The translations under genes and the position numbers were made by a program. 64,000 nt of DNA. Origin: Iphione sp. A-MEVVRFRX5. Its lineage: Eukaryota. The number at the start of each line of letters is the position of its first letter. Within the stretch, counting starts at the first letter, position 1. The stretch covers positions 59,520,001 through 59,584,000 of the forward strand of contig OZ320319.1 in assembly GCA_976226885.1 (NCBI GenBank), read 5' to 3'. This document shows, in pieces, positions 24,701-58,517 of the stretch. The notes under the pieces are model-generated. The model was not told the origin of the DNA. It did no database searches and saw only the letters and a program-made list of their open reading frames with translations.

Positions 24701-27700
24701 ACGTAGGCGACCCCCGATGTGAATATTGATTTGGGTGCATTAGCAATATTGATCGGAGTTTAAACTTACAGAGCCCGATGAATTTGAGGTGTTAATCTCA
24801 TTGGCCTGGTCTTTGACCAACATATCAGTTCAATAAATTAGCTGAGTGCTAAAGCAAAATAAGCCAGAGGAATGATGACTACCTACGCATATAGGTCCAT
24901 TTTTATAACTGTGATAAATTGGGTAAAATCCTATTTCCCCGTAGATACTTCTGACAAACATTCCGATAGCCAGGAATACCAAATCATGTATATTAACAGG
25001 CGACAAATGGAACTACAAATAGTACCTAATGGCCCTAACAAACTGCGAGGAAAATACATCGATTTCGTTGCACCTTTTGACTAGGCTCCCGAAAACAAGA
25101 ATTGAGGATATGTCCTTGAATGTATTTTGTCCACTAATAATTATACTAAAATGAATAATGCCGAATTAACCCAGGAGGGACATTATACTGGCCTTATCCT
25201 TATACTCTATATCCACAGATTCTACTCTGATTGGAGCTTACCTGTAATCGTCGCTGTAATTTTGATGGGGTCAAACTCGTTGACGGTAACTTTCCCCGGC
25301 TTCTTGATGAACTCTGGAGGCTTGCTGGCCGGTCTGTCAGAGAATATGCACACAGCGTGAAATCTAGTGCTAGTTTTAGATTGGTCCGAAGAGGAGAAGA
25401 GGATTTTCGGTAAATTTAGTCAGCTGTTTGAGAAAACATGAGCATATCGGAAAAATAGTGTCATTCCCTAAGATTTTATGTCTTCAGTACAAATCTAACG
25501 ACTTTGGTCATGATAGTTCATCAATACATTGTAGTTGATTAAATGATTGATTCTAAAGAAAATGCTCAGGAAGACGATGCATACTTGGCAGCAGCTCTGG
25601 CCTCGACCGTGACTTTGATGCTGTGGAAGACTTTGCCTTCACTGTTTGTAGCAGACACAGTGTACTCCCCATCATCATTGGTGTTGGCTTCATCAATGAT
25701 CAAGGCAAACTCATCGCCATCGACAACCACAGAAATACGCGCGTCAGGCTTGACCGGCTGGCCACCATGGAGCCAGCTTACCTGCGGGGCTGGGATACCT
25801 GTTATGGAGAGAGCAACGATCCAGTAAAGCCTGGTGGCATACTTACTGTAGCATTTTCTGCTGTTGAGGAAATAACGTAGATTTTTGGGCAAGTTTGAGT
25901 GAAATTATGTACTCATATAATACATGCGTAAACTATTACCACGAAATGTCTCTAATTATAATAAAGGTTTTATATCCAATATAGTACATTGCTAAATTGC
26001 ATTCTTCTCCCTAATCTGGGAGTGCCATATTGCGTTCTCTGCCATAGTTTGGGAGTGCCATTTGCGTTCGGACGCTAAAACGGTTTAATATTTCCTATTG
26101 ATATAATCAGTGACTTCCCAAGGGCATATTTGTTTGTCTGGTTGACGAAAACATCGTTTTCAATACGTGATGCCATATGTTTTTACTTTGTACTGTGCAA
26201 AGCGATGTCAAATCGGCAATGGTCTACACTCTCCCAGGCAGAGTCAAACAAATATTCAAAGATATAAAAAACATAGCTTCGTCGACATCTTGATGAAACT
26301 AACCCGTGAGTTGGCAAGTGATACGAATGGTCTCCCCTTCTCGGACGCTGACCGGCTGGGGAAGCCGAGCGAACTTAGGTGTCTCCTTGGTGAGCGTGGA
26401 CTTGACATTAACGTCAACTGTATGCTTCACGGTGCCATTGGCGTTGGTCGCTAAGATGACATAATTTCCCGAGTCCTCTGCAGTTGCTTTGTCGATCTCC
26501 ATGACTTCTAGGCCCTTTGTGGTGTCATGATAAATCTTTACACGCGAATCCTTCTTCTTTTGTTTTAGTTTCTTGTTGTCCTTCATCCAAGTGATCTCAG
26601 CCTCTGGCTCAGCTGAAATATTAAATTAAGCTTAGCTGCTTGGTTATGTAAATATCATTCTTTTCTTTCTTCATTACTTGCAGGGTTTTATCAAGAGACA
26701 TATATATACATGTGCGTGTACATTATAAACATATTTGAAAGGTCACTCCGATTATAACTGCCCGAATAAAAAAATATACATTTGCTCAGCTTTCCGGAGA
26801 GATATGGGTTTCCTAGATATGGATGACACGTTTCATTTTATATACTCGTCCACATTAACAGTTTTCACAATGGAAAGTCCACATAAACAATTTCTACAGG
26901 AGTTTCCATAAAAAAGGTCAAAGATAAGATTGTCCAGAGGGATCTCACAATCCAAGATTATATTGTGAGCATATTTGAATATCAAGGCACGTTTGATGCA
27001 TCCAAAGGGAAAAGGAATGGTTTGTTATGTGAATGCATCATGGGAATTAAAAGAGATACCTCTGGACAAAGATATTACAGCTTTGGGTAGAGCTCAATGG
27101 TGACTATTTACCAGTGGTCCCACTGGATACATTAGACATAAATAACGTGTTAAATTGATTCTCAATAATAAGCATGATGAACACAAGCGACTTCAATTAT
27201 TGTGATATATGCAACAGTTACAGTCCTGAAATGTTACAGAAAATGACGGAGGGTCGATCGATGTTAATGAAGGCAGGAGTCGTTGAACAACTTCACACTA
27301 GTGGTCCGTGTGAATTCTGCAATGCGGTCAAAATGATCTGTACATCTGGCGCAGACTCTGCCACAATGTGCACAAGAAAGCTGTAGCATTGTAAAATATG
27401 CGTTCACTCATCAAAAGCATTATCCACAAATCCATACCAACGCGTTTTTCAACGAAGCATATGGGGCAAATTTAATTGGGTCCGTTTTGACAAATTGGGC
27501 TTAGAATACACAATACAGCATAAACTGTTAGGTTGGATCGCTGCATGAATAAGCAAAATCAATGTAGTAGTAAACATTTAAATATATATAATGCATATTA
27601 TATGCATCGGTGGAGAAAAGTTAAACAGGGATTGGAGTCAATGAAAGGTTAAGGACAAGAGAATGTAAGGGTTGGAAACACCAACCTTGTGTAACTGTGA

Positions 27701-30700
27701 CCATAATTATTCTGACTACGTGAAAGAAACATTATATTATGCAGAGTAGTTACGTTATTTGTATATGGCGATGAAAAGTGGCTAGCATTTCATGAGTTCT
27801 CAGGGATGGTCTTCTATTTGAGAAAATGACTAGTCTAATCTAGGCTTCACTTTCCAGGATAAAGAACTGAGGTACGCGTAAGCATTTCTTGCCTAAGTGT
27901 TACATTATGTAAATCACCAAGCCTCGATAGCCCTTGGGATAGGATTGAGGAAGGAAATAATATTGATATTGGCCTCAATAAGCCGTATAACATCTCCTAT
28001 GTATACGATATTTAATCTATTGGGGAGCATAGTCAATAGCATCAGCTATTTGCATTACTGACATCTCCCTTCCAAATACATGTAATATTATTGACTGGCG
28101 AAGCTCTATCTGTCGAATCCAGATAGAATCATGCGTGCATGATGGCTGGGATGCTCAAAGTGTCAGGTCGCCCCGTACATACGAAAATTTCACATCAATT
28201 CAACTTGAAGGCTGATAAATTCTTAGTAAAGTCATTAGGAAAGGTCGCCATGTAGAACCGAGTGGTCGCTTTGGCAGTATTGAATATCTGGTCGTGCGTT
28301 TGAGAGCTACTGGTATCACGTTTGAGAGCTACTGGCATCAAATTAACCAACTCTTTTATGAAAATAGCAAGAGACGTAAACTTTCCTCTTTGCTATTCAA
28401 GTGTATGTGCTGTCTGCAGTGTGCCAATTAGTATTATTTTGCTGATGGTTGTTTGGTATAAGGGTTAAGCCAAAGACAGAGTTAAAGTATCAGAGATGAG
28501 ATGGAGGAGAAAACAAACTTTAAATGGGATATTGCGTAGCCTGCATTTTGCATAGGAACCATAAAGAACAGGAAAACAAGGCAATGGTTTGAGTAGAAAC
28601 ATCCGTAAGTACACATGAAAACAAAGAAGAGACAACAGCCGGACACAAACAGAAATACAGAATAAATAAGCAGTTATGAGGTACTTAAATAAAAATGGAC
28701 AAGAATAGACACTTGACCACAACAGGTATTAATACATTAATATTTAAGAGATAGTTGTGAAATATGATTTTGTAGTCGGTATCTTTTAAGGTATCAACTT
28801 GCTGTTGTCACTATTTGCTTCGTTGCTGTGCAGTCAATGAGCTTAGCATTGACCATTTCGGTGTGGTTAGACGCAAATAATACAACAGAAAAAATTATTG
28901 CAGCTCAAACCTGCCACTGAGCATGAAAGTCGTATAGGTTCTCCGTAAGCGACTTCCAAAGTCTGAACGTCCATTGTAATGTGGGGATATATATCTGGTA
29001 AGAGGGTTATGTGTTGCTCTGTGGATACTTGGTAGCTATCAGGAGTATCAAAGCTTGTCATCTGTCCTTCACTCTCCTTTGCTGCTTCATTTTCGTCTTC
29101 ATCCTGGAGTTCTGCGATGGTGACCATGATGGATGCCTCGGCTTTTCCGCCTTCGTTCGAGGCCTCAACTTTATATTCCCCTTCGTCGCTTTTTTTCACA
29201 TCACGGATACGTAGCATGAAGCAGTCATCGTCCCAATCTGCTTTTAGGCGGTCTATACTCTGTCTTCGAGGTAAAATGGTACGGTCACACCGCACCCACT
29301 GAACATCCGGAGTACTGCCTTTGCCTACGAAAGGGTGGACACACATAAAACAACATGTGGACAGCCACTAAAGGACAAACACAGTTGACCATCAACAGTT
29401 CATCCTGTAGCCAATGAATCGTTCTGTGCATTACTGAAATACTACGTTCACATGGGAATTAATCAAGAAAGATGACTAAGAAGAAATACAGGGCTGGGCA
29501 ACCTGTCGCATTTCGCAAAAAAGTGCGACATAGGGATTCTAAAATGCGACAACTTTCTTTTACTTCTCGCTCATTCAGTACTGAAAATAACATTAATTTG
29601 CAACAGGGACATTAAGAAATGCGACAATTTTTCCTGGGTACCCAGCTCTGAAATAGTTGAAAACAATGATCCATCTTATTTGATCAGGTTATCTGTGTTT
29701 TCTATTTTTTCCGTGGAAAGCAGAACTACTGAAAGAAAACTTCATTTTCTAGAATTTCAGCATGGGATAAAATGGCCGGAGTACGGAGATAGCGAAAGCA
29801 TGGATATCGAAGAATGGTATATTTAAAACTACATTTCAAATATATAGAGATTTACAGCGTATATATTTGGTACTAGTGGCAGAATGAACTGGATACTACG
29901 ACGCCACACCCTTTGCTCTAAGGAATGTCTTATTTGATGTCTGGGTTGTACCTACACAACAGGAACATACATTTTCCCTACATAAGGACTTTGCTATTCT
30001 GACTACTTCATTCGTTTAGTTTCATTATATGTTTTTATTGTACTGCTGATTTACCTTGCTGCCAAGTCGAGACAGAAGACTGCAGTCTAGTAGGTGTGAG
30101 CTAGTTTAGGTACTGAATGAGAACTTACTGTGTAAAGTTTCTGGGGAAGGGAATAAGGCAATAGTTTGGTTACTGTATCATATTGCAGTTAGTTTTATTA
30201 TATTTGATTGGGTACGGTTGCCATAAATTGCATTAGAGAGTGATGAATACCTGCACAAAATTATGAGTTAAATTTTAACAAATGCATTATGTGGAGAATT
30301 GAGGTGTATTTCTTATGGGAAATAAGAGCATTTACACATTACAACAGCTGTGCAGTAACGAGTACTGAGTTAAAGCCTTCCTACATTGAAGGTTCATCTA
30401 ATGGTTAGTAGTGGTTTGTGTGGACCGCAGCATGCTGAGAAGCCATTCGCTGTCCGGGAATGAGAGTAATGCCGCTGGATTCTGACCTTTGATCTTGCAG
30501 CTCAACCAAATGGTGTCCCCTTCCTGTACAACAACTGGCTCAGGCGCCTTCTCGATCTGAGGTGGTTCTGCTGCCTTCACAACCTCTGTGCTAGCAACCT
30601 CTGTTCTGATCGCAGCTTTGGTCTCTTCTATTAATGTAAATTGATCGGCTATGAATTGTTCTGTCGCAAACTCCTTCGGATTAACATTGACCATGACGGT

Positions 30701-33700
30701 GACACTCGTCATTCCATAAGAGTTTGTCGCTTCCACTTGGTAGGCTCCCTCGTCGTCCTCGGTAGCTTTCTCAATCACTAGGGTGTTTAGGTCTTGCTTC
30801 ATATCCCAGTCGGTTCGAATGCGACTGTCACCCTTCCGCGGTTTTATTCTCAGTCCATCCTTGAACCAGTGAACTTCTGGGTCTGGGTCACCTACACACA
30901 TTACATGAAATACGCAATGATAACTCGGAAACGATTTATAGTTGTTTTTCTATTAAAAAGGGCCTGATGAAGCCTGATTAACCTTTGAATTTTTCAAGAT
31001 GCCCCTATTCGATTATATTTGTATTCTAATTTATAAATATAGGTAATACCTAGCTTTTTACTGCACCGCAAATTCTGGCAGATATATGTTAGAGCAATGA
31101 AGAGTATCTTGATATAAATGTGTAGAGAACCCACAGAATTTAATAAAACGTTAAGGATACGATGTTTTCATGCATTTAAAAGCACTTAGTATCTGCCGTA
31201 ATTTTCGGTTAAACTATTAGTCTAGAAATAGCATTGTTTTCTTCAGAAATACTTATATTTACCATCACAATGTGAACTGAAAATACACAACTAGGGAAGA
31301 CATTACATTAAAAAAATGAACATTATGACAGATGACTGGAAAGGGAAATTTGAAAACTATTCCTCTAAGGAAATGGTTTCAAATAGTAATAAAGTGAATG
31401 AGATTCAACGAGAAGTAGCTGTGGAGGTTAGTCATGTGCAAAGATAACGAAGCCTCCGCTAGAGAAGAGGAAGAAACTTCGGCAATGTCTTGCGTACTGG
31501 CATCTTCAAAGGCCAGCTTGCCATGTAGCAATAATTGAGCATCAAAACGTGATGAACTCAATTTGGAAACCCGACGAGACAATGAGATATAAGCATCCTC
31601 TAGGAAAGAACAGAGATCATAAGATGAAACCATGCAGAACAGAATGAACAACTCTCTACCGGTTACGCGCGTTGAGAGACGAATTGTTTCGCCAATGAGG
31701 CAGGAGAAGGGCTGAGGTGGGATATCAAAGCGGGGTGACCGGTCCTCTCTCATGGTGACCATCACTGTCACAGCCATCGAGCCGTTCTCATTGACAGCTT
31801 CGAAACAGTAAGCGCCAGCGTCAGCGCTGCAGGCATTGTCTATGGTCAGCACGCACTCGCTCGTCGCCTCACTCCACATCATGCGGATGTGGCGGCCATC
31901 GAACAAGAGGCGCTCATTGTCTTTGTACCACGCAATCTCTGGTTCGGGATACCCTGTGAAAACAGAACCATAAGCTCAAGGCTCATATCAACAGTAAGCC
32001 AAATCTTTTCCTCTAATCAATTGTTTGGTAGCCACTCGCAGCCTACAAGGCACCTGGAATTGGGAATAAATGGGCATGTTAGAAGTCCTTTAATGAATCG
32101 TCACCGGAGACACAGGAGCAGTGTAAACCTGTTTGAAAGGTAAACACGGAGACGTGGGGGGGGGCGGTCCTGAAATATTTAAAGATGTAATTTCATCTAA
32201 CCTGTCACACCGCAAGTAAGTCGAATCGTCTCCCCCTCATTGACGCTGACCGGCTGGGGGGCGTGCCTGATGACTGGTGCAGTAGCCGGCTTTACTGATG
32301 CCTCAGCAGTTGTCTTCGCAGTGACCATGACGGTCACACTAACCGAGCCCTTCTCATTCTGCACCTTCATCCTGTAGCCGCCACCGTCCGCCCTCGTGGC
32401 TTCTCTGATTGTCAGTACGTGCAAATCTTGCTTCACGTCGTAGTGTGTGGTGATCCGCTTGTCCTTGCTGGGTTTCACTTTATTATCATCCTTGTACCAC
32501 TTCACCTCTGGTGCAGGAGTTCCTATATGGGGGGGGGGTGAAGCCAAGAAGGGGAAATGCATAGTCACATAGTAAGCCATGGAAGTTCTTCACGAAAAGG
32601 AAACAATGCAAATAACAGTATAATGCATACGAATGTAAGAATGTACAACAAAAAATTACATCGTATCTTTGTGCACAAACGATGCACTAAACGCTATATA
32701 TGTCTCAATATATGCAGGGGAAAAGGGAGCATGCTTACTTCAAAGGACCCTAGCTCAGGTACTTCCCTCATAAAATTGTATACATGTATGTGTAAGATGT
32801 ATTCAACCTCCATGTAAGGATGGGTCGGCGTTTCATTATTGATTATTGACAGGTGGAAAAGGGGGACAGGAACATCCATATCCATATAGGTATAGTATTA
32901 CATACTAATAATCAATAAAGATCAGTGTCGGGGTACATGACTAAAAATTCTAAATATTGCCCACAGAATAATTTAGGTTTTCAGACAGCAATGGACATGC
33001 AAAAGTTTCATATTCACGAGGAACGTCTTTAAAACTGGGGGGATATAAATTCAATTAAAAGTTCAATTAAAACAAACTGACTCAAAACAGTCCAGCGGCT
33101 ACTTAGACATTCATGTTAAATGCTACTTAAGTTGAAATGTTCTATGACTTCAAGACATGCACCGATATCTTGTCCCAGGAAAAGATTGGAAACGGTTTAC
33201 CTCAAACATATAAACGAATCATTTTAAAATCATTAGACGTGGATCTTGCACGGATGGGGATTTCAACATAAACTAAAAAAACTATTCTCGTGTATAAACA
33301 TTATGAAATAGTATGGTATAGTCCATAAAATAATAATTAATTGATGACAAGGTAAAGCTCTGAAAACATTCATGCAATAGGCATGGATTAGTAGGTCATC
33401 TCATTGTGGCGGTGCTGCCAAGCCTCCACTGGAGAAATGATATGATCCTATAGTATTATCTTTGAATCTCATACGCAAAGCAGGTTGGGTTCTCGGCACT
33501 GCAGTACACACCATACCATGCATCTAGTCCTAACCTGAGACTTTGCAAGAGAGGGTAATAGTTTCTCCTTCAACAAACTCCACAGGCTCAGGAGCGACGT
33601 CAATCCTTGGTTCACATGGTACAGGCTCAGCTGTCAGTTTCATCGTTTCTGATAGTTGTTCCTCGGTTATCTCTTTACTTTCTACCTTGGTTTTCTTTAC

Positions 33701-42700: not shown

Positions 42701-45700
42701 CCTTTATCTTTGTTTCCTCTTCACCCAGGGCAGCTATTCCTTCCCTAATGGTTGGCTGTGTAGGTTCTGATACAAACACCTTTCCTTCTGTTAATGTGTG
42801 TGTTTCCTTTTGAGTAATGAGTTTGGTAGCCTCTGCTTGAATGGTTTGTTCTTGAGCCATTGCAAGTGCTTCCCTTTCAGTGATGGGTTGAGTGGCCTTT
42901 TGTACTATTGCCCTTTGTTCATCTACTACAGGTTTTTCTTTTGCAGTAGCAGCTTGAATAGCCTCAAGAGTCATAGCCTTTTCTCCACTCTCTGCAACCA
43001 TTTCCTTAGCAGAGATAAGTTCAGCAGGTACCTTTATCTTTGTTTCCTCTTCACCCAGGGCAGCTATTCCTTCCCTGATGGTTGGCTGTGTAGGTTCTGG
43101 TACAAACACCTTTCCTTCTGTTAATGTGTGTGTTTCCTTTTGAGTAATGAGTTTGGTAGCCTCTGCTTGAATGGTTTGTTCTTGAGCCATTGCAAGTGCT
43201 TCCCTTTCAGTGATGGGTTGAGTGGCCTTTTGTACTATTGCCCTTTGTTCATCAACTACAGGTTTTTCTTTTGCAGTAGCAGCTTGAATAGCCTCAAGAG
43301 TCATAGCTTTTTCTCCACTCTCTGCAACCATTTCCTTTTCCAAGATCAGTTCAGTAGGTACCTTTCTTTTTGTGTCCTCTTTGCCCAGGGCTCTCTTTTC
43401 TATTGTTTGCTCTTCTGTGAGTGCTTCTTCACTGAAGATCTCCTGAACACATTCCCCAAGTTTCGACAGCCTGGCCTTTGACTCTTGCTCAGTGACCATA
43501 ACATTCACACTAACGGAGCCCATGCCATTTACAACTTTTAGAGTGTATAGTCCAGCATCTTCCCTTGATGCCTGTTGAATAGTCAATATATAGAGGTCTC
43601 GCTTGACGTCAAATTCTATTTTGAGACGTTTATCCTTGTTTGGCTTCAATTTCTTGTTGTCTTTGTACCACTTGATCTCTGGTGTCGGATGTCCTGTTTC
43701 AATAATTCAAAGTAACTGCTTAGAACAATTCTAAGTGTTGATCCAATCGACAACCTATAATGCGCACCAAATGGAAATTATCAAAAATTATGTATTGATG
43801 TAAGCCTTACCAAACGTCATTTTACCTTGTGGATACATATGGACTATGAAAAAATAGGTGTCTTCTTTTAGTGAACATGGCGTCGTCAAAAATATCGTTA
43901 ACAGAACTTGGCTGTGAGATGAAAGCTTCGCAAAATATTGATAACAGAAAAAGCAAAAAAATCTCAATATTATTGCAGGGCTATGAACATAGAGGAAAGG
44001 AAATAAAGGAAACGTTAATCGAAAATTTAAAAAAGGATACCAAAGATAACAAAAAAGAAATAATGAATATACGACAAAAGGAGTATGCCTATCTACACAG
44101 TTGAAGGAAATACCTAAGGTGAAGAAAGAAGTTAAAACCATACTGAAATTAATAATGGAAAATGTAGTTATAAACAACATTCCTGCAACGGAATCAATGA
44201 AGCGTTAGAGCAACGCAGCGCATGTTATGTCCTTGCAAGAAACAGGATACGTCCTAACCTTGGACCCTACAGCTCAGGCGTATTTCACCTCCTTCCTCAA
44301 AGTTAACCGAGTCCGACAGGAGGCTGATGGTTGGCTTGGAAGGTTCCACCTCTTCATCTGGCTCTTTGGGAAGTTTGCGGACTTCCAACGTTGCACCGGC
44401 CTCACCAAAGTCCTTCGTGACCTGTCTAGACCGCCCAGTGCCTTCAGCAACATACTGGTTCCGGGCTTCAGCATCCTCTGACATAACCGGCTTGACGACT
44501 TCTTCTCGTGAAATGCCTTTATCTGGAGCAGATCTCTTTTTGGTAGGCTGTACTTTGATTATCGCTGCAACATCCTCCTCGGATTCACTTTCAGAAGACC
44601 CTGAATCCCAAGGTGTCTCTTTGGTAGGTTTTACTTTGGTTACTTCTGCAACATCCTCTTCGGATTCACTTTCAGAAGATCCTGAATCCCAAGGTGTCTC
44701 TTTGATAGGTTTGACTTTGATTACTTCTGCAACATCCTCCTCGGATTCACTTTCTGAAGACCCTGATTCCCAAGGTTTAGCAGGTTTTGTCACAGGCTTG
44801 GGTTCTCTTGGCTTCACCTCTGCCACAGGTTCTGGCCTTTTCCTAGGATCTTCAACAACAATAGCCGTGTCAGAATCTGACTCCAACGAAGATCCTGCTT
44901 CCCAAGGAAGTGTCTGCTGTGGCTTTTTCATGTCCTCTTTTGCCTGTTCGACTGGTGCCTTGGGCTGTGCAACTTCAGGAACTTTTTGAATGGCATGTTT
45001 GACATCCTCGAAATCTGATGATGATTCTGACTCAGACTCAGATCCAGACTCAGATTCTGAGTCCCATGGTTTTTTCACCTTAGCTGATTTCTTTAGCTCA
45101 GCTCCAGTCGGTGGCTTTTGAATCACCGTTGTCCCTTGCTTGTGTTCCGGGGGCAAGGTGACAATGGCCTCAGCAGGGGCTTTATCCGCTACACCGAATG
45201 TCCTTTCACCAGCTGCAACGTCTTCAATTTGTGGGATCTGCTTTACTCCTTGCTGAATATCCTTTAACTCTTGCAGTTGCATTGGGGCCGATATAGGTTT
45301 CTGGTATACCTTAGCCCCTGGTTCGAGTGGCTGACCTTCTGCCAGCGTAACCCCCGGTACAGCCGATGATGGTGCCTGAACTGGGAACGCCTCTTCCATG
45401 CTGAGCGCCTGTGTGGGTATACTTTCAACAAGAACATCATCCACGGGGGCTGCCTGGCGTACGGTGACTTTCGGTGGTGAATCCTCTTGAGGTACAGACT
45501 CCGTAGGTTTAATTTCTGACTTTTGAGCCTTCGGGCTTAATTCATCTGTCCGTTCTTTCGGTTCAATATCTGCCCGACCGCGTGTTAGATTCGCATCTCC
45601 TGCTGGCAGTCGTCCAGCTTTGTCCTTACCAATAGACTGCACTTGTCGTTGCTCAGTTGTCTTCAGATGTTCCGCTGGCTCTTCTAAACAGCTGACCATG

Positions 45701-48700
45701 AAGCTAATAACTGGTGTTCCCCTCCCATCGTTGATTCGTAGGATGTAGAAACCTTCGTCTTCAGGTCCCGCATCCATGACCGTCAGGGAACACAGGTCTT
45801 CGGTGTCCTTAAAGTCCAGTGTGATCCTTGGGTTGACATTAGGCCTGATGCGCTCGTCATCCTTGTACCAGTGTAACAGTATGGGCGGTACTCCTAAACA
45901 CATATACATACAAAATGTGACTATATGGTATAAAGACATAGTATTTAGATAATATTCGCTATTTACTACGAAGTAAATGTTTTGACAGATATGAGGAGAA
46001 AGTTTTGTGAAAAATAATTTACCAAAACAATACGTGAAAAAAATTAGAGGTAGTATGTCATTTAACATACTTTCTAAAACAGAATTGTTAAAAATATATA
46101 TATACATATATACACATATTTCCGTGTGCACTATTTAAAACAAAACATGTGTCTATCAAACTACGCCTATCCTACTTCTCCTTCCTGAAGTACGAAGCAG
46201 ACCTTTTAAACATGCGTCAAGAAAAAATCAAAATAAGAGAAAAGTGGCAATAAAGTACTATTCACGCAGAAGTAAAATAATATCTACTGTAAAATTAATT
46301 TTCCCTACAACTGAAATGAAAATGAAAAGTGAACATAATGTTGAAATAAGTCGGAGAGCATTGTTGTCATCAGGATTTAGCGTTAATATACAGACAAACC
46401 ACTTTCTAAAAAGCCACTGTCTGACGGACATCCACCAGAGAAAGAAGCAGGGTTATAGTTGCATTCGTGCTTGCTGACCTTCCACTTGTACAGTCAGTGA
46501 GATTTCCTCTCCCTTGGTGAAGGAGACATTGTGAGGTGTTGGTCGTGGTTTCAGCGATTCTTGTGGCATCGCTTCTTCGTCCGAACTGGTAACCGACTCC
46601 GAGCTGGTAACCGATTCTGATGAAGAAAAACCATTGATGATATCCACTTTTCGCTGGGGGCTATCCATTGTTTCTATTTGCTTTTGATCTTGAACAATTA
46701 TCCTGTCTTCGCAGGTGACAGCTTCCGTTTTACCCTTTTCCCTTAAGGATCTTTCTATTGTTCTCTTCTCGGAGCCCTCAGTCCTGTGGACGGTTTTTAC
46801 CGACCGCTGTTGTTCCTCAGTCAAGACGCTTTCAGAGTCCTTGGTTCTCGATATTCGTTCTTCGAGTGTCAAAGATCTGTCGACTGCTTCCTTTGTTTTC
46901 TTAATGCTGCGTTTTTTCTTACTCATAGCATCTTCAGTAATGTCCTCAGCTCTGCTGTCATCCTGGATGAAAACATCAGAGTCGTGGATGACTATATCAA
47001 TGGTCTCGTCTTGTTGGCCTCTCTCCGTTGCACCTTTGAGGACCACTCGAATAGTTACAGTGGATGAGCCATAGTCATTGGTTGCCCGCAGGAGGTAGAT
47101 TCCAGCATCCTGCTCAGTAGCTTCCACAATACGGAGGATCTGGAGGTTCTGTTTAACCTCCACATCCATTGTAGTCCTGCTATCTCTGCGCGGATGTACT
47201 TTCTTATTATCCTTGAACCACTCAATATCCGGTTCCGGGTAACCTGGGAGCATGGTGGCAGTATAGGTATGTTGTATCAAGGGACCAGATTATTGTATCA
47301 AGGGACCAAATAACAAGATTTATAACAGAACACTCGTGGGCCCCTTTAAGAAAATGAGATTATGGCGCGTGAGCGCTTTGGTCCACATGAAAATGGGACT
47401 GCAATAAAGTACAAAATGTTTGGTAGGAAAAATTACCCGTTATGAGCTGAAAATACATCAACATTTGTTTGCTTCAGAAGATTGTTTGTTGGTTTACATA
47501 ATGTAGGCGTCCGGATGATTGCGTTTGCGAGACATTTTTCCACATGAAAAGATCATGTGTTCTAACAGCTTGGTGGGGAAGGAAACATCGAAGGACTCAC
47601 TGTGGAGTGGCACATGAGCTACGCAGACTTCACAATAAAAAGTGAAAAAATGGACGGGACACTAGCTTCTTGACGAGATATTCCAAGAATGGGGATTCAG
47701 TAAGGACAGATCCGGTCAACACATCTTCTGATAACATACAGGACTCTGTAAGTGAAAAAGTATGGATGCCTACCTGACACTTTGCAGGAGAGGGTAATGG
47801 TATCTCCCTCGAGGAACTCCACTGGTTCGGGCGCCACCTCAATAACTGGCTCCTGTGGCTTGGGCGCTGGCGCCGCCGCGGTGGTGCCGTCGTCCACGTT
47901 CACCATGACGCTGACCTCCTTGGTGCCATTGTCGTTCATGACCTCCAGGTGGTATGCTCCTTCGTCCTCCTTCTTGGCGTCCTCAATAATGAGGACATTG
48001 AGATCATCTTTGAGGTCAAAGTCCATGCGCACCCTGGGGTCTTCGGGAGAGGGCTTGATCTTCTTGCCGTCCTTGTACCACGTGAACATGGGCTCCGGTT
48101 CACCTGCGTTTAGAGAAAATGAAAGGGGATTTCAGTTAGATCTGTGCTTCTAAGTCTATGGGGCAAGCTTGTTAGTGCAACACAAATATGAGGTATTAAT
48201 TGGAGAACTGGGGTTTGGCAGATCGTAGGAAACTTCCCAAAGCAATACTCAACGCGATATCTCATGCACGATTGTGAGGAGGTGAGCTTCCTAGCCCAGG
48301 CCTATGGTGGTGTCACAAGGAAAAGATAGGAGCATACGTGGGCTAATGAGCTGATTGTTTTTATTGGAAGACAGAACAGAAATACTAGACGCCAACATTA
48401 TTGATCCTACTTTTCTTTAGGTACATAGTATTCCTATGGACGGTGGTAATAAGTAAGATATCTGCTTTCTGAAAAAAGTGTGTTTTTATCACTGGTTCTC
48501 GGAGACTGATTTCCGAAAGATGAAGTTCTGAGCGCAGGAAGGAAAAAAAGACAAAATGAAGAATTTGCTTTAGAAGACGTCGTTGGTAGAACGAAATGAA
48601 GAAGGGTCTTGCCTGAAACAGGACACAAACTAAATATGAACAGGGCCTATAACTACCTAGCAATGCAAACCAATAATTATAAGGAACACCATGCACATCG

Positions 48701-49514
48701 ACAGATAAATATAATCATTCATGACAAAAGTGCAATGATAAATTAATTCTGAAGAAATGAAGATAATCAAGATAAGAAATAAATATAATCAAAGCCATTA
48801 GCATTCATTTCCATGGCAGCAATGTAGATCAACCTGGAAATGAGACTGATAAAGCATTAGCAGGCAATACTGGGTTACATTATGATTGCCCCCTCCTCCC
48901 ATAAGTAAGCCACACATCATTTACACACTTGGCACACTCCCTTGTGTTAGCATATTAGTGGGTCGTTACTTGGAGGGTCATAGGGCCGGTTCCAAATGAC
49001 TGAACCGAATCCCTCCCCACTTTTGCCACTCCCAAGGTCCGTTCTCCTTGAAGGGCAGCCTTGTTCACTCTACCATGACGCTGACCTGCAATGCGACAAC
49101 TCAGCCGGATCGTCTCGCCCGGTTGTACCGACGCTGGTTCGGGCGCGATCGCTATGATCGGCTGTCCCTCGACGTGCGGCAGCTCCATGTTCGCCGTCGT
49201 CGACTGGACGCGACGATCGGCAGTGGCGGAAACGGAAGTGGTCTCTGAGACGGTGACCTCTTCGACCGCATACCCAGCGCCCTCGATGACCTTGGCATGC
49301 TTCTCCATGACCTTCACTGGAACAACTGCACGCGACGCACCCGTGACCGATGATACAACGACTGTGTAAGCGTCTGAATCTTCCGGTCCCGCCCCCACCA
49401 CTTCCAAAGTATGGACGCCTTCTACCGCATCCATTGCTGTGTGAACGCGCGCGTCCGCGACTGCCGTGAGTGGTGTTTGACCTTTGTACCAAGTCACTTC
49501 AGGTTCCGGATCAC
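415..49514 (-). CDS. OBSCN: Obscurin/UNC-89-like giant muscle protein, partial multi-exon gene (43 exons traced, ~5,500 aa): Ig x17 - SH3 - SH3 - DH - PH - Ig x5 - FN3 x2
   Basis: Exon chain reconstructed manually with GT-AG sites and matching phases. The DH/PH sequence (YLARPTERI...KAED...YPGDLSSLG...FLVW...RHLFLF...RFELW) has the obscurin-type RPxER and YPGxLxxLG signatures rather than the Trio/Kalirin KPVQR. It is flanked by many I-set Ig domains and FN3 domains. Confidence 0.88.
1677..1745 (-). CDS. OBSCN: Putative cassette microexon, 69 nt, phase 1-1: RNRRRSFSRGRSMSLGRGSLDRD
   Basis: Long pyrimidine tract plus tag acceptor, G|GTAAAG donor, frame-preserving between the two FN3 exons. Confidence 0.65.
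2549..2733 (-). CDS. OBSCN: Exon, 185 nt, phase 2-1: FN3 C-half (YMYRVKAYNSGGYS)
   Basis: ORF 2415..2765; cag| acceptor, C|GTGAGT donor. Confidence 0.93.
3075..3249 (-). CDS. OBSCN: Exon, 175 nt, phase 1-2: linker + FN3 N-half
   Basis: KPYLTDIDVNNFKLSWLP; aag| acceptor, AA|GTACGT donor. Confidence 0.9.
3966..4138 (-). CDS. OBSCN: Exon, 173 nt, phase 2-1: Ig C-half (DAGTYECILTNSAG)
   Basis: ORF 3940..4197; cag| acceptor, A|GTAAGT donor. Confidence 0.93.
4521..4652 (-). CDS. OBSCN: Exon, 132 nt, phase 2-2: Ig N-half (APSFTRRISNQKV...GVPDPEVSW)
   Basis: Translated manually; cag| acceptor, TG|GTAAGC donor. Confidence 0.92.
5273..5430 (-). CDS. OBSCN: Exon, 158 nt, phase 0-2: Ig C-half (DAGEYTCKAANEAG)
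   Basis: Translated manually; cag| acceptor, AA|GTAAAT donor. Confidence 0.92.
6391..6662 (-). CDS. OBSCN: Exon, 272 nt, phase 1-0: Ig C-part + next Ig N-half
   Basis: GETAILTIK...DAGKYTC...GQPRPEVTWYFK; cag| acceptor, ATT|GTGAGT donor. Confidence 0.9.
6987..7348 (-). CDS. OBSCN: Exon, 362 nt, phase 2-1: Ig C-half + next Ig N-part
   Basis: ORF 6955..7392; aag| acceptor, G|GTGAGT donor. Confidence 0.92.
7770..7887 (-). CDS. OBSCN: Exon, 118 nt, phase 1-2: Ig N-half (APSFKTKLTDV...GVPEPEVSW)
   Basis: Translated manually; tag| acceptor, TG|GTGAGT donor. Confidence 0.92.
8389..9009 (-). CDS. OBSCN: Exon, 621 nt, phase 1-1: Ser/acidic disordered segment with repeated [YF]-x-[STD]-A motifs
   Basis: ORF 8264..9058; tttgacttcag acceptor, G|GTAGTG donor; GC-rich codon usage like the other exons. 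Confidence 0.82.
9343..9573 (-). CDS. OBSCN: Exon, 231 nt, phase 1-1: Ig domain
   Basis: ORF 9335..9610; cag| acceptor, G|GTAAGT donor. Confidence 0.93.
10053..10169 (-). CDS. OBSCN: Exon, 117 nt, phase 1-1: acidic linker + Ig N-start (APTFTAKLKPVTST)
   Basis: cag| acceptor, G|GTGCAG donor; joins in frame to EGEPVWFEC. Confidence 0.85.
12086..12265 (-). CDS. OBSCN: Putative cassette exon, 180 nt, phase 1-1 (GIEEIDIPAEERSRLLLRARPTFPQ...DFRSDSDISASSARG)
   Basis: GC-rich island, open in the required frame, G|GTGAGC donor, weak aaag acceptor with a distal pyrimidine tract. Confidence 0.7.
14023..14179 (-). CDS. OBSCN: Exon, 157 nt, phase 0-1: PH domain C-half
   Basis: RRFELW...FQARNAHVKQAWCDDI; cag| acceptor, G|GTAAGT donor. 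Confidence 0.93.
15175..15324 (-). CDS. OBSCN: Exon, 150 nt, phase 0-0: PH domain N-half
   Basis: DDFLVW...ERHLFLFDNKLMLTK; cag| acceptor, GAT|GTGAGT donor. Confidence 0.93.
15866..16013 (-). CDS. OBSCN: Exon, 148 nt, phase 2-0: DH C-terminus / PH start (KAED...YPGDLSSLGPILRH)
   Basis: ORF 15695..16051; cag| acceptor, CAT|GTAGGT donor. Confidence 0.92.
16513..16634 (-). CDS. OBSCN: Exon, 122 nt, phase 0-2: DH CR3 (LSLPEYLARPTERINEYINILKDF)
   Basis: Translated manually; tag| acceptor, AG|GTAAGA donor. Confidence 0.92.
18635..18676 (-). CDS. OBSCN: Putative cassette microexon, 42 nt, phase 0-0: WVRREAQKAARALQ inserted in the DH domain
   Basis: Pyrimidine tract plus tttgacag acceptor, CAG|GTATGT donor, GC-rich island in an AT-rich intron, frame-preserving. 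Confidence 0.6.
20076..20168 (-). CDS. OBSCN: Exon, 93 nt, phase 0-0: DH domain (AQDFQMYVPYYLDRD...PQKFIK)
   Basis: cag| acceptor, AAG|GTCAGT donor. Confidence 0.88.
20422..20998. mobile_element. MITE-like element with imperfect inverted ends (GAATACTC...GAGTATTC) and internal short direct repeats
   Basis: Left CAGAGAATACTC...CTCGAAAACTGAA versus right TTCAGATTTCGAGTATTCAC; internal GATAGAGCTACTCAT-type repeats. Confidence 0.45.
21340..21409 (-). CDS. OBSCN: Exon, 70 nt, phase 2-0: DH domain (DQFLADLLKCNSKANSVGQCFLDH)
   Basis: cag| acceptor, CAC|GTGAGT donor; matches the typical 'FL..L...vg..Fl' DH segment. Confidence 0.88.
21829..21996 (-). CDS. OBSCN: Exon, 168 nt, phase 2-2: DH domain CR1 (DLWESERDYIRDL)
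   Basis: ORF 21762..22058; cag| acceptor, GA|GTACGT donor. Confidence 0.92.
22281..22699 (-). CDS. OBSCN: Exon, 419 nt, phase 0-2: end of SH3-1, SH3 domain 2 (AIADY...GWVPPSYL), start of DH
   Basis: ORF 22277..22726; cag| acceptor, CG|GTAAGT donor. Confidence 0.93.
22802..22933 (-). CDS. OBSCN: Exon, 132 nt, phase 0-0: SH3 domain 1 (EYPCLEDY...LKKGDVVEVL...EWLVR)
   Basis: tag| acceptor, AAG|GTACAA donor; SH3-like pattern, completed by VCYVP in the next exon. Confidence 0.85.
23331..23455 (-). CDS. OBSCN: Exon, 125 nt, phase 1-0: charged linker (AATEKEDTEKEEDKDL...EDEMLFK)
   Basis: cag| acceptor, AAG|GTCAGT donor; needed to convert phase 1 to phase 0. Confidence 0.82.
23703..23891 (-). CDS. 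OBSCN: Exon, 189 nt, phase 1-1: Ig C-half (GNPSVTWFKEG...DAGEYTITANNEAG)
   Basis: Translated manually; tag| acceptor, G|GTGAGT donor. Confidence 0.9.
25242..25333 (-). CDS. OBSCN: Exon, 92 nt, phase 2-1: Ig N-half (KPPEFIKKPGKVTVNEFDPIKITATITG)
   Basis: Translated manually; cag| acceptor, G|GTAAGC donor; phases bridge both neighbours. Confidence 0.88.
25585..25798 (-). CDS. OBSCN: Exon, 214 nt, phase 1-2: Ig C-half
   Basis: cag|GTATCCC acceptor, AA|GTATGC donor; GIPAPQVSWLH...DDGEYTVSATN. Confidence 0.9.
26304..26612 (-). CDS. OBSCN: Exon, 309 nt, phase 1-1: Ig C-half / Ig N-half
   Basis: cag|CTGAGCC acceptor, G|GTTAGT donor; AEPEAEITWMK...DSGNYVI...TCQLTG. Confidence 0.92.
28911..29324 (-). 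CDS. OBSCN: Exon, 414 nt, phase 1-1: divergent Ig C-half / Ig N-half
   Basis: tag|GCAAAG acceptor (an alternative in-frame aag lies 6 nt downstream at 29318), G|GTTTGA donor; TPDVQWVR...DEGEYKV...SCSVAG. Confidence 0.85.
29489..29650. mobile_element. Short MITE with inverted ends CAGGGCTGGGCAACC / GGGTACCCAGCTCTG
   Basis: Near-complementary 15-bp termini and an internal repeated TGCGACA motif. Confidence 0.55.
30487..30891 (-). CDS. OBSCN: Exon, 405 nt, phase 1-1: Ig C-half / Ig N-half
   Basis: tag|GTGACCC acceptor, G|GTCAGA donor; GDPDPEVHWFK...DEGAYQV...SCKIKG. Confidence 0.92.
31660..31953 (-). CDS. OBSCN: Exon, 294 nt, phase 1-1: Ig C-half / Ig N-half
   Basis: cag|GGTATCC acceptor, G|GTAGAG donor; GYPEPEIAWYK...DAGAYCF...STRVTG. 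Confidence 0.9.
32202..32522 (-). CDS. OBSCN: Exon, 321 nt, phase 1-1: Ig C-half / Ig N-half
   Basis: tag|GAACTCC acceptor, G|GTTAGA donor; GTPAPEVKWYK...DGGGYRM...TCGVTG. Confidence 0.92.
33535..33945 (-). CDS. OBSCN: Exon, 411 nt, phase 1-1: Ig C-half / Ig N-half
   Basis: cag|GATATCC acceptor, G|GTTAGG donor; GYPAPEIKWYK...DEGAYKL...SCKVSG. Confidence 0.92.
34487..35008 (-). CDS. OBSCN: Exon, 522 nt, phase 1-1: Ig C-half / Ig N-half
   Basis: aag|GATACCC acceptor, G|GTCAGC donor; GYPAPEIKWYK...DEGIYKL...SCRFSG. Confidence 0.88.
35655..36176 (-). CDS. OBSCN: Exon, 522 nt, phase 1-1: Ig C-half / Ig N-half
   Basis: tag|GATGCCC acceptor, G|GTCAGC donor; GCPVPEIIWYK...DEGSYTV...SCRVSG. Confidence 0.9.
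36670..37197 (-). CDS. OBSCN: Exon, 528 nt, phase 1-1: Ig C-half / Ig N-half
   Basis: cag|GACATCC acceptor, G|GTCAGC donor; GHPIPDVRWYK...DEGFYTI...ASRISG. Confidence 0.9.
37464..38131. mobile_element. TA-flanked MITE (Tc1/mariner-pogo-like CAGT...ACTG termini) containing an internal minisatellite
   Basis: TA|CAGTAGGACTT at left, AGGTCCCACTG|TA at right, repeated AGGACACCTC subterminal motifs. Confidence 0.65.
37829..37982. repeat. 31-bp minisatellite x5 (GTCATCAAATTCAGTACTTTTTGGACTTTTA-like)
   Basis: Units start at 37829, 37860, 37891, 37922 and 37953. Confidence 0.9.
38773..39198 (-). CDS. OBSCN: Exon, 426 nt, phase 1-1: Ig C-half / Ig N-half
   Basis: cag|GTAATCC acceptor, G|GTTAGA donor; GNPKPEVKWYK...DEGMYQL...SCKVSG. 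Confidence 0.92.
39701..43693 (-). CDS. OBSCN: Giant exon, 3,993 nt, phase 1-1: Ig C-half, 110-aa tandem-repeat linker, Ig N-half
   Basis: cag|GACATCC acceptor, G|GTCAGC donor; continuous 1,385-aa ORF 39492..43649. Confidence 0.92.
40400..43380 (-). repeat. Coding tandem repeat, 330-bp (110-aa) unit: 8 near-identical full copies plus a diverging 9th, with further degenerate copies down to ~39900
   Basis: TCAGCAGGTACCTTTATCTT recurs at 40711, 41041, 41371, 41701, 42031, 42361, 42691 and 43021, with a variant at 43351; MVAESGEKA occurs 9 times in the protein. Confidence 0.97.
44259..45893 (-). CDS. OBSCN: Exon, 1,635 nt, phase 1-1: Ig C-half, long PEVK-like/acidic linker, Ig N-half
   Basis: tag|GAGTACC acceptor, G|GTTAGG donor; GVPPILLHWYK...DEGFYIL...EIRLSCRVQG. 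Confidence 0.9.
44540..44780 (-). repeat. Coding tandem repeat, 81-bp (27-aa) unit x3: PW[DE]SGSSESESEEDVAEVxKVKPxKET
   Basis: CTGAATCCCAAGGTGTCTC at 44601 and 44682 (81 apart), third copy near 44762; visible in the translation. Confidence 0.92.
46479..47243 (-). CDS. OBSCN: Exon, 765 nt, phase 1-1: Ig C-half, charged linker, Ig N-half
   Basis: cag|GTTACC acceptor, G|GTCAGC donor; GYPEPDIEWFK...DAGIYLL...SLTVQVEG. Confidence 0.9.
47774..48103 (-). CDS. OBSCN: Exon, 330 nt, phase 1-1: Ig C-half / Ig N-half
   Basis: cag|GTGAACC acceptor, G|GTAGGC donor; GEPEPMFTWYK...DEGAYHL...SCKVSG. Confidence 0.92.
49086..49514 (-). CDS. OBSCN: Exon, 429 nt, phase 1-1: Ig C-half (GDPEPEVTWYK...DSDAYTV), linker, Ig N-half (...ETIRLSCRIAG)
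   Basis: cag|GTGATCC acceptor, G|GTCAGC donor; lies within ORF 48955..49533. Confidence 0.9.
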
Positions 49515-52500: not shown

Positions 52501-52534
52501 AGCCTGGAGGGCCTTCCTATCTAATTGGGGATAC

Positions 52535-58197: not shown

Positions 58198-58517
58198 AGG
58201 CCCGTAGCCAAGGGGGTATCGGGGGTATCGGACGATACCCCCACAAGAGGCCAGAAGTTCCACCTCTCTAATTTCAGATAGTATCTGAAATTAGAGAGGT
58301 GGAGGGAGACAGGATAGAGACAGAGAGGGAGGAAGGGAGAGAGAAAAAATGGCAGAGAATGCTTCCCAGGGACATATTTTATGGCATTTAGAAGAGATTA
58401 TGACAAAATTTGTTACCATGAGTTCCACCACGTTAACCAGGAGTCCCCCCTCTCGTACCAGGAGTCCCACCTCTCTAATTTGCGATACCCCCCACAAACT
58501 TTCCTGCCTACGGGCCT
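58198..58517. mobile_element. MITE with TIR AGGCCCGTAG...CTACGGGCCT
   Basis: Perfect 10-bp inverted termini; similar flanks aacataat / gtcataat (possible degenerate 8-bp TSD); internal duplicated CCACCTCTCTAATTT and GATACCCCC. Confidence 0.7.

What the first reader, a model, noticed from the sequence alone, without database searches (positions are those of the whole stretch)
26304..49514. Fifteen consecutive symmetric 'half-Ig + linker + half-Ig' exons: a plug-in cassette array for tuning the length of a giant protein
Seen in sequence: all 15 exons start and end in phase 1 at the same Gly of the Ig fold (…SCxVSG|xPxPEIxW…). Their lengths (429, 330, 765, 1635, 3993, 426, 528, 522, 522, 411, 321, 294, 405, 414, 309) are all multiples of 3. 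Each exon therefore carries the C-half of one Ig, a linker of very variable length (about 10 to over 1,200 aa) and the N-half of the next Ig. Inference: skipping any subset keeps the frame and rebuilds a complete chimeric Ig from two paralogous halves. Splicing could thus combinatorially change spring length without breaking domains. The mostly non-optimal GTCAG/GTTAG donors fit regulated usage. Established: titin, projectin and obscurin tune elasticity by alternative splicing, but usually with whole-domain exons.
Basis: partly seen in the sequence, partly recalled or inferred. Interest (0 to 1): 0.72.

Follow-up and report, generated by a model that had tools for sequence, protein, structure and literature searches.

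The report
Off-register Ig exon array, obscurin-like gene
A giant muscle-protein gene of a marine invertebrate is built from 15 exons that each begin and end inside an antibody-like domain, so an exon can be added, lost or skipped without breaking the protein. A related species shows that evolution uses this, and conserved splice signals suggest, without RNA proof, that the cell may use it too.

Summary
On the minus strand, 15 consecutive exons (49514 to 26304) have AG/GT borders, are phase 1 at both ends and have the stated lengths. Each is cut at the same B-C-loop position of an I-set Ig domain.

Two corrections:
- The cut is at about 29%/71% of the fold, not in the middle.
- The junction codon before exon 15 is Ala, not Gly.

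The gene is obscurin-type: Ig array, then SH3, DH and PH, then Ig and FN3.

A related species (ENA contigs) keeps the same borders and phases. Its linkers differ greatly in length (exon 4: 1635 vs 4017 nt). It also has a different exon count, because window exons 7-10 are lineage-specific duplicates. So the exon is shown to be the unit of evolutionary gain and loss.

Alternative splicing could not be tested, because no RNA run was listed. Two indirect signs favour regulated use:
- Unusual donors with a pyrimidine at +3 (GTCAG/GTTAG) are conserved between orthologous exons, while other donors of the gene are GTRAGT.
- (U)GCAUG lies within 60 nt downstream of 11 of 29 array exons (about 2 expected). 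In two introns its position is conserved.

AlphaFold2 models of single exons are consistent with non-native N/C pairs forming one Ig, but the docking was inferred, not seen.

The scan had already reported the same architecture in the adjacent upstream part of this gene (s1-334843).

The parts
49086..49514 (-). Exon 1 (429 nt): C-part of an Ig, linker of about 48 aa, N-part of the next Ig. Donor GCAG|gtcagc.
   Evidence: Orthologue in L001 is 426 nt with a gtcag donor.
47774..48103 (-). Exon 2 (330 nt), linker of about 15 aa. Donor gtaggc, one of the four donors with a purine at +3.
   Evidence: Orthologue is 309 nt and 68% identical.
46479..47243 (-). Exon 3 (765 nt), linker of about 160 aa rich in E/S/T/D. 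N-part lacks the Cys. Donor gtcagcaa.
   Evidence: Orthologue is 756 nt with a gtcagc donor.
44259..45893 (-). Exon 4 (1635 nt), linker of about 450 aa rich in E/P/K/S, with an 81-nt x3 repeat. Donor gttagg.
   Evidence: Orthologue is 4017 nt with a gttag donor.
39701..43693 (-). Exon 5 (3993 nt), linker of about 1236 aa including 8.8 copies of a 330-nt (110-aa) repeat at 96% identity. Donor gtcagcag.
   Evidence: Orthologue is 2247 nt with an identical gtcagcag donor. No protein homologue of comparable length was found.
38773..39198 (-). Exon 6 (426 nt). Donor gttaga. TGCATG at +34 of the downstream intron (window 38734-38739).
36670..37197 (-). Exon 7 (528 nt), a young paralogue. Donor gtcagcaa. 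GCATG at +14 (window 36652-36656).
35655..36176 (-). Exon 8 (522 nt), a young paralogue. Donor gtcagcaa. TGCATG with its GCATG at +14 (window 35637-35642).
34487..35008 (-). Exon 9 (522 nt), a young paralogue. Donor gtcagcaa. Degenerate GCATT at +14.
33535..33945 (-). Exon 10 (411 nt). Donor gttagg. TGCATG with its GCATG at +14 (window 33517-33522); the same spacing is seen in relative exon R07.
   Evidence: AlphaFold2 model.
32202..32522 (-). Exon 11 (321 nt), linker of about 12 aa. Donor gttagatg.
   Evidence: Orthologue R09 is 318 nt with donor gttagata.
31660..31953 (-). Exon 12 (294 nt), linker of about 3 aa. Donor gtagag. TGCATG with its GCATG at +25 (window 31631-31636).
   Evidence: Orthologue R10 is 294 nt with TGCATG (GCATG at +23).
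30487..30891 (-). Exon 13 (405 nt). Donor gtcaga. AGCATG with its GCATG at +52.
   Evidence: Orthologue R11 is 405 nt with donor gttaga.
28911..29324 (-). Exon 14 (414 nt), the most divergent Ig parts. Donor gtttga.
   Evidence: Orthologue R12 is 423 nt with donor gttggc. AlphaFold2 model.
26304..26612 (-). Exon 15 (309 nt). Its acceptor gives an Ala junction codon (G|CT). Donor gttagt.
   Evidence: Orthologue R13 is 309 nt with the same CT start.
25585..25798 (-). Exon 16 (214 nt): C-part only, which closes the last Ig of the array. Phase 1 to phase 2. Consensus-type donor gtatgc.
25242..25333 (-). Exon 17 (92 nt): N-part only (phase 2 to phase 1). Donor gtaagc.
23703..23891 (-). Exon 18 (189 nt): C-part only, starting at the same Gly. 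Donor gtgagt.
13898..22735 (-). SH3, DH and PH exons downstream of the array, which identify the gene as obscurin-type.
   Evidence: Pfam: SH3_2 E=1e-8; RhoGEF E=1.6e-5 (fragment, below the curated cutoff); SOS1_NGEF_PH E=2e-12 and 8e-8. Colinear tblastn to vertebrate obscurins.

Best explanation
This is the Ig-linker segment of an obscurin-type giant muscle protein gene. It lies just upstream of the SH3-DH-PH cassette. Each I-set Ig domain is interrupted by one phase-1 intron in the B-C loop, and there is no intron between domains. Each exon therefore carries strands C to G of one Ig, a probably disordered linker of about 3 to 1236 residues, and strands A, A' and B of the next Ig. Because every exon is phase 1 at both ends and ends in G, one exon is a self-contained insertable unit. 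Tandem duplication, loss or skipping of an exon always restores a complete Ig at the new junction. Shown: evolution uses the exon as this unit. Inferred: several exons, most likely 6-8, 10 and 12, are regulated cassettes whose weak GTYAG donors depend on a downstream (U)GCAUG enhancer of the Rbfox type. Their inclusion would then set the length of the extensible tether in a tissue- or stage-specific way.
For: Anatomy. Gene identity. Conservation of borders and phases in a related species, with linker lengths changed (exon 4: 1635 vs 4017 nt; exon 5: 3993 vs 2247 nt). ORF fragments from other assemblies start and stop at the same borders. Tree: eight starred orthologue pairs, the window-only clade of exons 7-10 (98/97) and the relative-only pair R07/R08 (93/75, not starred), which gives 5 vs 3 exons between the orthologues of exons 5 and 11. 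Donors: 11 of 15 have a pyrimidine at +3, against none of the 12-13 best candidate donors elsewhere in the gene. The purine/pyrimidine class is kept in 10 of 11 orthologous pairs. (U)GCAUG at +7..+60 occurs in 11 of 29 introns against 2.0 expected (P<5e-5). With young paralogues collapsed it is 8 of 25 against 1.8 (P=2e-4), and 0 of 12 control introns carry it. Its position is conserved for W12/R10 and W10/R07. Introns 7-9 keep only their first 33-62 nt alike. AlphaFold2 on single exons gives pLDDT about 90 (exon 10) and 80-90 (exon 14) for both Ig parts, with pTM 0.69 and 0.62 and linkers near pLDDT 50. The C-part superposes on titin, obscurin and OBSL1 Ig domains at 1-2 A. Precedents: whole-Ig exons of human OBSCN are skipped during development (PMC11871629); Rbfox proteins bind GCAUG and regulate muscle exons (PMC11874969, 10.1101/840272).
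Against: No transcript evidence: the look-up of sequencing runs listed no RNA run, so no junction was seen. All 15 exons keep long open frames, and 11 have clear orthologues, which also fits constitutive inclusion. The exon side of the donors (CAG|GT) and positions +4 and +5 are consensus, so the donors may be efficient. In an unbiased 5-mer test, GCATG ranks among the top words but does not survive correction for 1024 words; I noticed the motif post hoc. Control donors were chosen with a score that favours a purine at +3. The two species are related, so their counts are not independent. I inferred the AlphaFold2 docking of the N-part from pLDDT and pTM and did not see it in coordinates. The pairs modelled are the duplication-junction pairs, not skip junctions.
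Confidence: 0.6

Rival explanations
1. Constitutive array. The off-register layout is only the footprint of an old intra-domain intron plus tandem exon duplication. All exons are always included in muscle. The unusual donors and GCAUG merely ensure efficient, perhaps muscle-specific, constitutive splicing.
For: All exons are open and most have orthologues under evident purifying selection. Off-register exons with another intron position occur in the C-terminal Ig domains of the same gene, so the layout is a general habit of the gene. No RNA evidence for skipping exists. Donors keep CAG|GT and +4A/+5G.
Against: A non-consensus +3 pyrimidine is conserved across species while all other donors of the gene are GTRAGT. 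GCAUG is enriched and position-conserved right after the exons. Homologous giant genes (human OBSCN, titin) skip such exons.
Confidence: 0.3
2. Mutually exclusive choice among the equal-sized young paralogues, exons 7, 8 and 9 (528, 522 and 522 nt), as in Dscam or tropomyosin, giving one of three linker variants per transcript.
For: The lengths are near-identical. The first 33-62 nt of their downstream introns are conserved although the rest has diverged. They form a lineage-specific clade.
Against: Including all three keeps the frame, so nothing enforces exclusivity. The introns are 493-646 nt, so there is no steric block. No docking/selector-type complementarity stood out above shuffled controls.
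Confidence: 0.05
3. Annotation artefact: some of the 15 are decaying pseudo-exons rather than used exons (for example exons 3, 7 and 12, which lack the Cys, or exon 14 with a gtttga donor).
For: The B-strand Cys is lost in three N-parts and one donor is weak.
Against: Every exon has an uninterrupted frame of up to 1331 codons. Exons 3, 12 and 14 have orthologues with the same features in the related species, including the lost Cys.
Confidence: 0.03

Closest known systems
Vertebrate obscurin (OBSCN) and its developmentally skipped Ig exons
   Same: The domain order is the same: a long I-set Ig array followed by SH3-DH-PH, Ig and FN3. The SH3 domain is 45-50% identical and colinear. In human OBSCN, symmetric Ig exons (17, 18, 48-56) are skipped during muscle development (PMC11871629).
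   Different: Human Ig exons each encode one complete domain, with introns between domains and short linkers. Here the intron is inside the domain, none lies between domains, and linkers of up to about 1236 residues separate the Ig domains. Nematode UNC-89 hits have the SH3 near the N-terminus.
Titin I-band / PEVK cassette exons
   Same: Both are a giant muscle protein with a series of symmetric exons, a low-complexity charged (E/K/P-rich) spring sequence and Ig domains. Titin length is tuned by exon skipping (my own knowledge; PMC3575840 was seen as title and abstract).
   Different: Titin exons are in register with its domains. Titin skipping is controlled by RBM20, which I did not examine here. 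The signals found here are GTYAG donors and GCAUG.
Half-Ig alternative exons of Dscam (exons 4 and 6) and FGFR (IIIb/IIIc)
   Same: Alternative exons encode part of an Ig, so the mature domain is a composite of constant and variable parts (PMC3364881; FGFR from my own knowledge).
   Different: Those are mutually exclusive same-length alternatives that change binding specificity in extracellular receptors. Here the exons are serial, of very different length, each spans two domains plus a linker, and the protein is cytoplasmic.
Kettin / Sallimus Ig-linker modules
   Same: Both have I-set Ig domains separated by linkers. Seven exons here give modules of about 135-143 residues. A related ENA ORF (P0006) has six regular modules of about 135 aa in one exon.
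   Different: Kettin linkers are regular (about 35 aa) and follow the actin repeat (my own knowledge). Here linkers range from about 3 to 1236 residues, and the gene carries a RhoGEF cassette, so it is not a kettin orthologue.
Hybrid spectrin repeats after in-frame exon loss in dystrophin
   Same: Exons are out of register with the structural repeat, so an in-frame deletion or skip yields a hybrid repeat that can still fold (my own knowledge).
   Different: The fold is different and exon phases are irregular, so only some dystrophin deletions are in frame. Here every exon is equivalent in phase and cut point.

Membership tests
Obscurin / UNC-89 family | Long array of I-set Ig domains | tested here: met
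   Pfam I-set matches in every exon (E 1e-10 to 1e-17 for most; weaker for exon 4 at 9e-5). Foldseek places the C-part on titin, obscurin and OBSL1 Ig domains.
Obscurin / UNC-89 family | SH3-DH-PH (RhoGEF) cassette | tested here: met
   SH3_2 E=1e-8; RhoGEF E=1.6e-5 (a fragment, below the curated cutoff); SOS1_NGEF_PH E=2e-12 and 8e-8. Colinear tblastn to five vertebrate obscurins.
Obscurin / UNC-89 family | C-terminal Ig/FN3 region and protein kinase domain(s) | tested here: inconclusive
   Ig and FN3 exons are present downstream. The kinase region would lie beyond the start of the window and was not seen.
Regulated cassette-exon arrays of giant muscle proteins (titin/OBSCN type) | Symmetric exons whose removal keeps the frame and the domain structure | tested here: met
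   15 of 15 exons are phase 1 at both ends, all end in G, and the cut point in the fold is constant.
Regulated cassette-exon arrays of giant muscle proteins (titin/OBSCN type) | Transcripts with and without the exons | not testable with these tools
   The look-up of sequencing runs listed no RNA run, so read laying could not be used. No near-identical protein of this species is in the protein collections.
Rbfox-activated exons | (U)GCAUG in the proximal downstream intron | tested here: met
   6 of 15 window introns and 5 of 14 introns in the relative carry it within +60, against 2.0 expected in total (P<5e-5). None of 12 control introns carries it.
Rbfox-activated exons | Conservation of the motif between species | tested here: met
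   W12 (+25) and R10 (+23) share flanking sequence. W10 and R07 both read gttag-N7-TGCATGG. W06 has TGCATG and R06 has TGCATT at about +34. The motif is not conserved for exons 3 and 13.
Rbfox-activated exons | Inclusion depends on an Rbfox protein | not testable with these tools
   This needs a knock-down, a minigene or CLIP in the animal or a heterologous system.
Kettin-type Ig-linker actin-binding modules | Regular linker of about 35 residues giving a constant module length | tested here: not met
   Linkers range from about 3 to 1236 residues.
Mutually exclusive exon clusters (Dscam type) | Docking/selector RNA pairing or another mechanism that enforces one exon per transcript | tested here: not met
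   RNAduplex of the conserved intron starts against the local pre-mRNA is no better than shuffled controls. Joint inclusion stays in frame.

The most novel reading that the evidence does not exclude
The array is a true combinatorial hybrid-domain splicing system. In different muscles or stages the animal skips various subsets of these exons (and of the dozens upstream), each time creating a chimeric Ig from the N-part of one paralogue and the C-part of another. Conserved weak GTYAG donors, read out through downstream UGCAUG/Rbfox, would act as the per-exon switch. I found no description of this mode of length tuning for any giant muscle protein.
Probability: 0.15. Interest if true: 0.8.

Novelty: new variant of a known kind. 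Interest (0 to 1): 0.5.

Why it matters
Exon shuffling theory expects symmetric exons to coincide with domains. Here a whole array is symmetric yet out of register with its domains, and it still evolves by gain and loss of single exons. This shows that a fold can be modular at a loop inside the domain. If the exons are also skipped in vivo, this would be a natural system of chimeric Ig domains. It would provide a set of tolerated A-A'-B / C-G strand combinations useful for protein engineering. It would also add a new way to tune the length of a sarcomere-associated tether in a lophotrochozoan. The conserved GTYAG donors paired with GCAUG give concrete, mutable elements, so the question can be tested directly.

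Tried and rejected
1. RNA evidence. The look-up of sequencing runs on window:31600-37400 listed no RNA run and the cap is one search, so read laying was never usable.

2. Spliced proteins of the same species. Neither search of protein representatives nor search for homologous proteins returned near-identical proteins. All close hits are unspliced ORF calls on genomic contigs of relatives.

3. Exon 5 (1330 aa) had no homologue of comparable length.

4. Docking/selector-type RNA pairing of the conserved intron starts was no better than shuffled controls.

5. Same-exon versus same-domain coupling of N-part and C-part similarity gave r=0.56 vs 0.45, which is not decisive. The tree was more informative.

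6. An unbiased 5-mer enrichment test puts GCATG among the top words, but it does not survive correction for 1024 words. The targeted resampling test is significant.

7. The upstream 14.5 kb (49515-64000) has no N-part or C-part exon, no Pfam hit and no orthologue of the relative's extra exon.

8. The 205-kb ENA contig of a third assembly could not be read because its file is too large.

9. One two-exon translation (exons 16+17) was printed inside a script only to check phases and was sent to no search tool.

10. The organism was not identified by me. Other notes of the scan call it an annelid or lophotrochozoan (unchecked).
Full report
**Observation**

The coding strand is the minus strand. 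Each has AG before, GT after and an open frame in phase 1. Pfam I-set matches begin at profile position 27-29 of 90 at the first residue of every exon. The last 26 residues of every exon form a conserved N-part, roughly EP.I..APEPVEF.EG..I.LSCKVS. Each exon therefore carries strands C to G of one Ig, a linker, and strands A, A' and B of the next Ig. The cut is at about 29%/71% of the fold, not at the half.

All exons end in G. The split codon is completed by the next exon and is Gly, except before exon 15, where it is Ala (G|CT) in the related species too. Approximate linker lengths are 48, 15, 160, 450, 1236, 47, 81, 79, 79, 42, 12, 3, 40, 43 and 8 residues.

The series is capped downstream by three exons:
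- exon 16 (25798-25585), C-part only;
- exon 17 (25333-25242), N-part only;
- exon 18 (23891-23703), C-part only.

No partner exon for exon 1 lies within the 14.5 kb upstream in the window.

**What the gene is**

Downstream of the array lie an SH3 domain, the start of a DH (RhoGEF) domain, a PH domain, more Ig domains and an FN3 domain. These are colinear with the SH3-DH-PH region of vertebrate obscurins. The SH3 domain is 45-50% identical and sits near the C-terminal end, as in vertebrates, whereas the nematode UNC-89 hits have it near the N-terminus. The gene is therefore obscurin-type.

Other notes of the scan call the animal an annelid or lophotrochozoan; I did not check this. The Ig domains after the PH domain are also split inside the fold, but at another position. 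The scan had already described the same off-register layout in the part of this gene that starts about 6 kb beyond the window end (s1-334843). This finding is the downstream continuation of that array.

**Related species**

ORF calls from unannotated ENA and Logan assemblies are 50-66% identical to exon 10. They start just before G.P.PE.KW and stop just after LSCKVSG, so they have the same exon borders.

For one assembly (ERZ25767047) I fetched 34.6 kb, as L001 plus L003. It holds 14 exons of the same type, all AG/GT, phase 1 at both ends and divisible by 3. A maximum-likelihood tree of C-part plus N-part gives strongly supported orthologue pairs for window exons 3, 4, 11, 12, 13, 14 and 15. 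It gives weaker grouping for exons 1 and 2. Exons 5 and 6 were paired with R05 and R06 by position and donor, because the tree leaves them unresolved.

Exon lengths are nearly conserved where linkers are short:

| Window exon | Window (nt) | Relative (nt) |
|---|---|---|
| 1 | 429 | 426 |
| 2 | 330 | 309 |
| 3 | 765 | 756 |
| 11 | 321 | 318 |
| 12 | 294 | 294 |
| 13 | 405 | 405 |
| 14 | 414 | 423 |
| 15 | 309 | 309 |

The long linkers differ greatly: exon 4 is 1635 vs 4017 nt and exon 5 is 3993 vs 2247 nt.

Between the orthologues of exons 5 and 11 the window has five exons and the relative three. Window exons 7-10 form their own clade (support 98/97), and R07/R08 form their own pair. The relative also has an extra 993-nt exon 1.7 kb upstream of the exon 1 orthologue, with no counterpart in the window.

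This shows that the single off-register exon is the unit of duplication and loss, and that linker length drifts freely while phase and cut point are kept.

**Signals bearing on regulated splicing**

(a) Donors. Of the 15 donors, 11 have a pyrimidine at +3: 7 gtcag, 3 gttag and 1 gtttg. The best candidate donors of 12-13 other exons of the same gene are all gtaagt/gtgagt-like. My scoring for those controls favoured a purine at +3, which is a caveat. The purine/pyrimidine class at +3 is the same in 10 of 11 orthologous exon pairs, often with identical hexamers or octamers (exon 5: gtcagcag in both; exon 11: gttagat in both), although the introns are otherwise unalignable. Read-through 'SGQ' in ORFs from other assemblies shows gtcag donors there too. 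A non-consensus donor kept across species indicates selection for it.

(b) GCAUG. GCATG lies within +7..+60 of the downstream intron for window exons 6, 7, 8, 10, 12 and 13, and for relative exons 0, 3, 7, 8 and 10. That is 11 of 29 introns, against 2.0 expected from resampled interior windows of the same introns (P<5e-5). With young paralogues collapsed it is 8 of 25 against 1.8 (P=2e-4). None of 12 control introns has it. The position is conserved for W12 (+25) and R10 (+23), and for W10 and R07 (both gttag-N7-TGCATGG). In an unbiased 5-mer test GCATG is among the top words but does not survive full multiple-test correction, and I noticed the motif post hoc.

(c) Intron starts. Introns 7, 8 and 9 are alike only in their first 33-62 nt (78%, 67% and 57% ungapped identity). 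The rest of the introns and the upstream 60 nt are at random level. Four-fold sites of the C-parts are about 50% identical.

GCAUG is the Rbfox binding element, and Rbfox regulates many muscle exons (PMC11874969 and 10.1101/840272, seen as abstracts). From my own knowledge, a site downstream of the exon usually promotes inclusion. A weak donor with a proximal GCAUG is the textbook layout of an Rbfox-activated cassette exon. This is an inference from motifs, not a demonstration.

**Folding of non-native pairs**

In a single exon the C-part and the N-part come from two different native domains. This is the pair that forms at the junction right after a tandem duplication.

- Exon 10 gave pLDDT 88-97 for residues 1-70 and 93-97 for residues 111-136, about 46-61 for the linker, and pTM 0.69.
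- Exon 14, the most divergent, gave 76-91 and 81-89, with pTM 0.62.
- The C-part superposes on titin, obscurin and OBSL1 Ig domains at 1-2 A.

A pTM this high, with about 40 disordered residues, implies that both segments form one body, that is, a circularly permuted Ig. I could not inspect coordinates, so this is an inference. The N-parts of exons 2, 5-10 and 13 are 46-84% identical to one another (most pairs 57-84%), so many skip junctions would differ little from native ones.

**Mechanism and odds**

Shown:
- the anatomy;
- the gene type;
- conservation of the layout;
- exon-wise birth and loss;
- free drift of linker length.

Inferred:
- The linkers are disordered tethers. They have low pLDDT and an E/K/S/P/T-rich composition.
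- Several exons are regulated cassettes.

I put about 65-70% on at least some of the 15 exons being alternatively skipped in some tissue or stage. Mutually exclusive use of exons 7-9 is unlikely, because no selector pairing was found and nothing enforces exclusivity.

**Comparison and novelty**

Human OBSCN and titin tune length with symmetric exons that are in register with whole domains (PMC11871629). Dscam and FGFR use alternative part-Ig exons, but as mutually exclusive variants in receptors (and my own knowledge). My literature searches found no description of a serial, off-register Ig-linker exon array, or of hybrid Ig domains produced by skipping in a giant muscle protein. The searched library is incomplete.

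I rate it a new variant of a known kind. It is moderately interesting, and the scan had already seen it on the adjacent stretch of the same gene.
- the cross-species proof of exon-wise evolution;
- the conserved GTYAG donors;
- the GCAUG enrichment, which makes the splicing hypothesis directly testable.

No stretch was taken for human, and no N runs occur in the window.

Noticed in passing
window 22781-22933 (-): There is a second, partial SH3-like open stretch (Pfam SH3_2 E=1e-4; it matches the obscurin SH3 core) just upstream of the main SH3 exon (about 22699-22281). It could be a duplicated or alternative SH3 exon.
   Followed up: partly
window 9338-9628, 6958-7404, 6373-6669 (-): The Ig domains after the PH domain lack the B-C-loop intron. 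They are split later in the fold (I-set profile position about 46-57), so the gene has off-register exons with a second intron position.
   Followed up: partly
window 40483-43391 (-): Exon 5 holds 8.8 copies of a 330-nt (110-aa) repeat at 96% identity, rich in E/A/T/K/Q. No protein of comparable length matches it. The orthologous exon in the relative is 1.7 kb shorter. The scan noted this separately as s1-349378.
   Followed up: partly
window 62000-64000, especially 63637-63753: A GC-rich island (GC 0.52) with (GCT)n-like triplet repeats lies inside the 14.5 kb or longer intron upstream of exon 1. Its ORFs have no Pfam hit. An internal promoter or an unrelated element is possible.
   Followed up: partly
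L001:5452-6444 (+): The related species has an extra 993-nt off-register exon whose linker is made of 13-aa APTDRSEPNKEEL-like repeats. It lies 1.7 kb upstream of the exon 1 orthologue and has no counterpart in window 49515-64000.
   Followed up: yes
window 36609-36669, 35594-35654, 34426-34486 (-): The first roughly 33-62 nt of introns 7, 8 and 9 are conserved (gtcagcaagt..gcatg..gtgat.tgctt) although the rest of these introns is unalignable. Read-through would give ...SGQQV(T/V)H and then a stop.
   Followed up: yes
protein P0006 (ENA contig, 33 kb): A single 1172-aa ORF from another organism starts at G|DPSPDVEW and ends at ...CQAKG|. It contains six regular Ig-linker modules of about 135 aa without the internal intron, so it is a multi-module off-register exon, kettin-like in its spacing.
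   Followed up: partly
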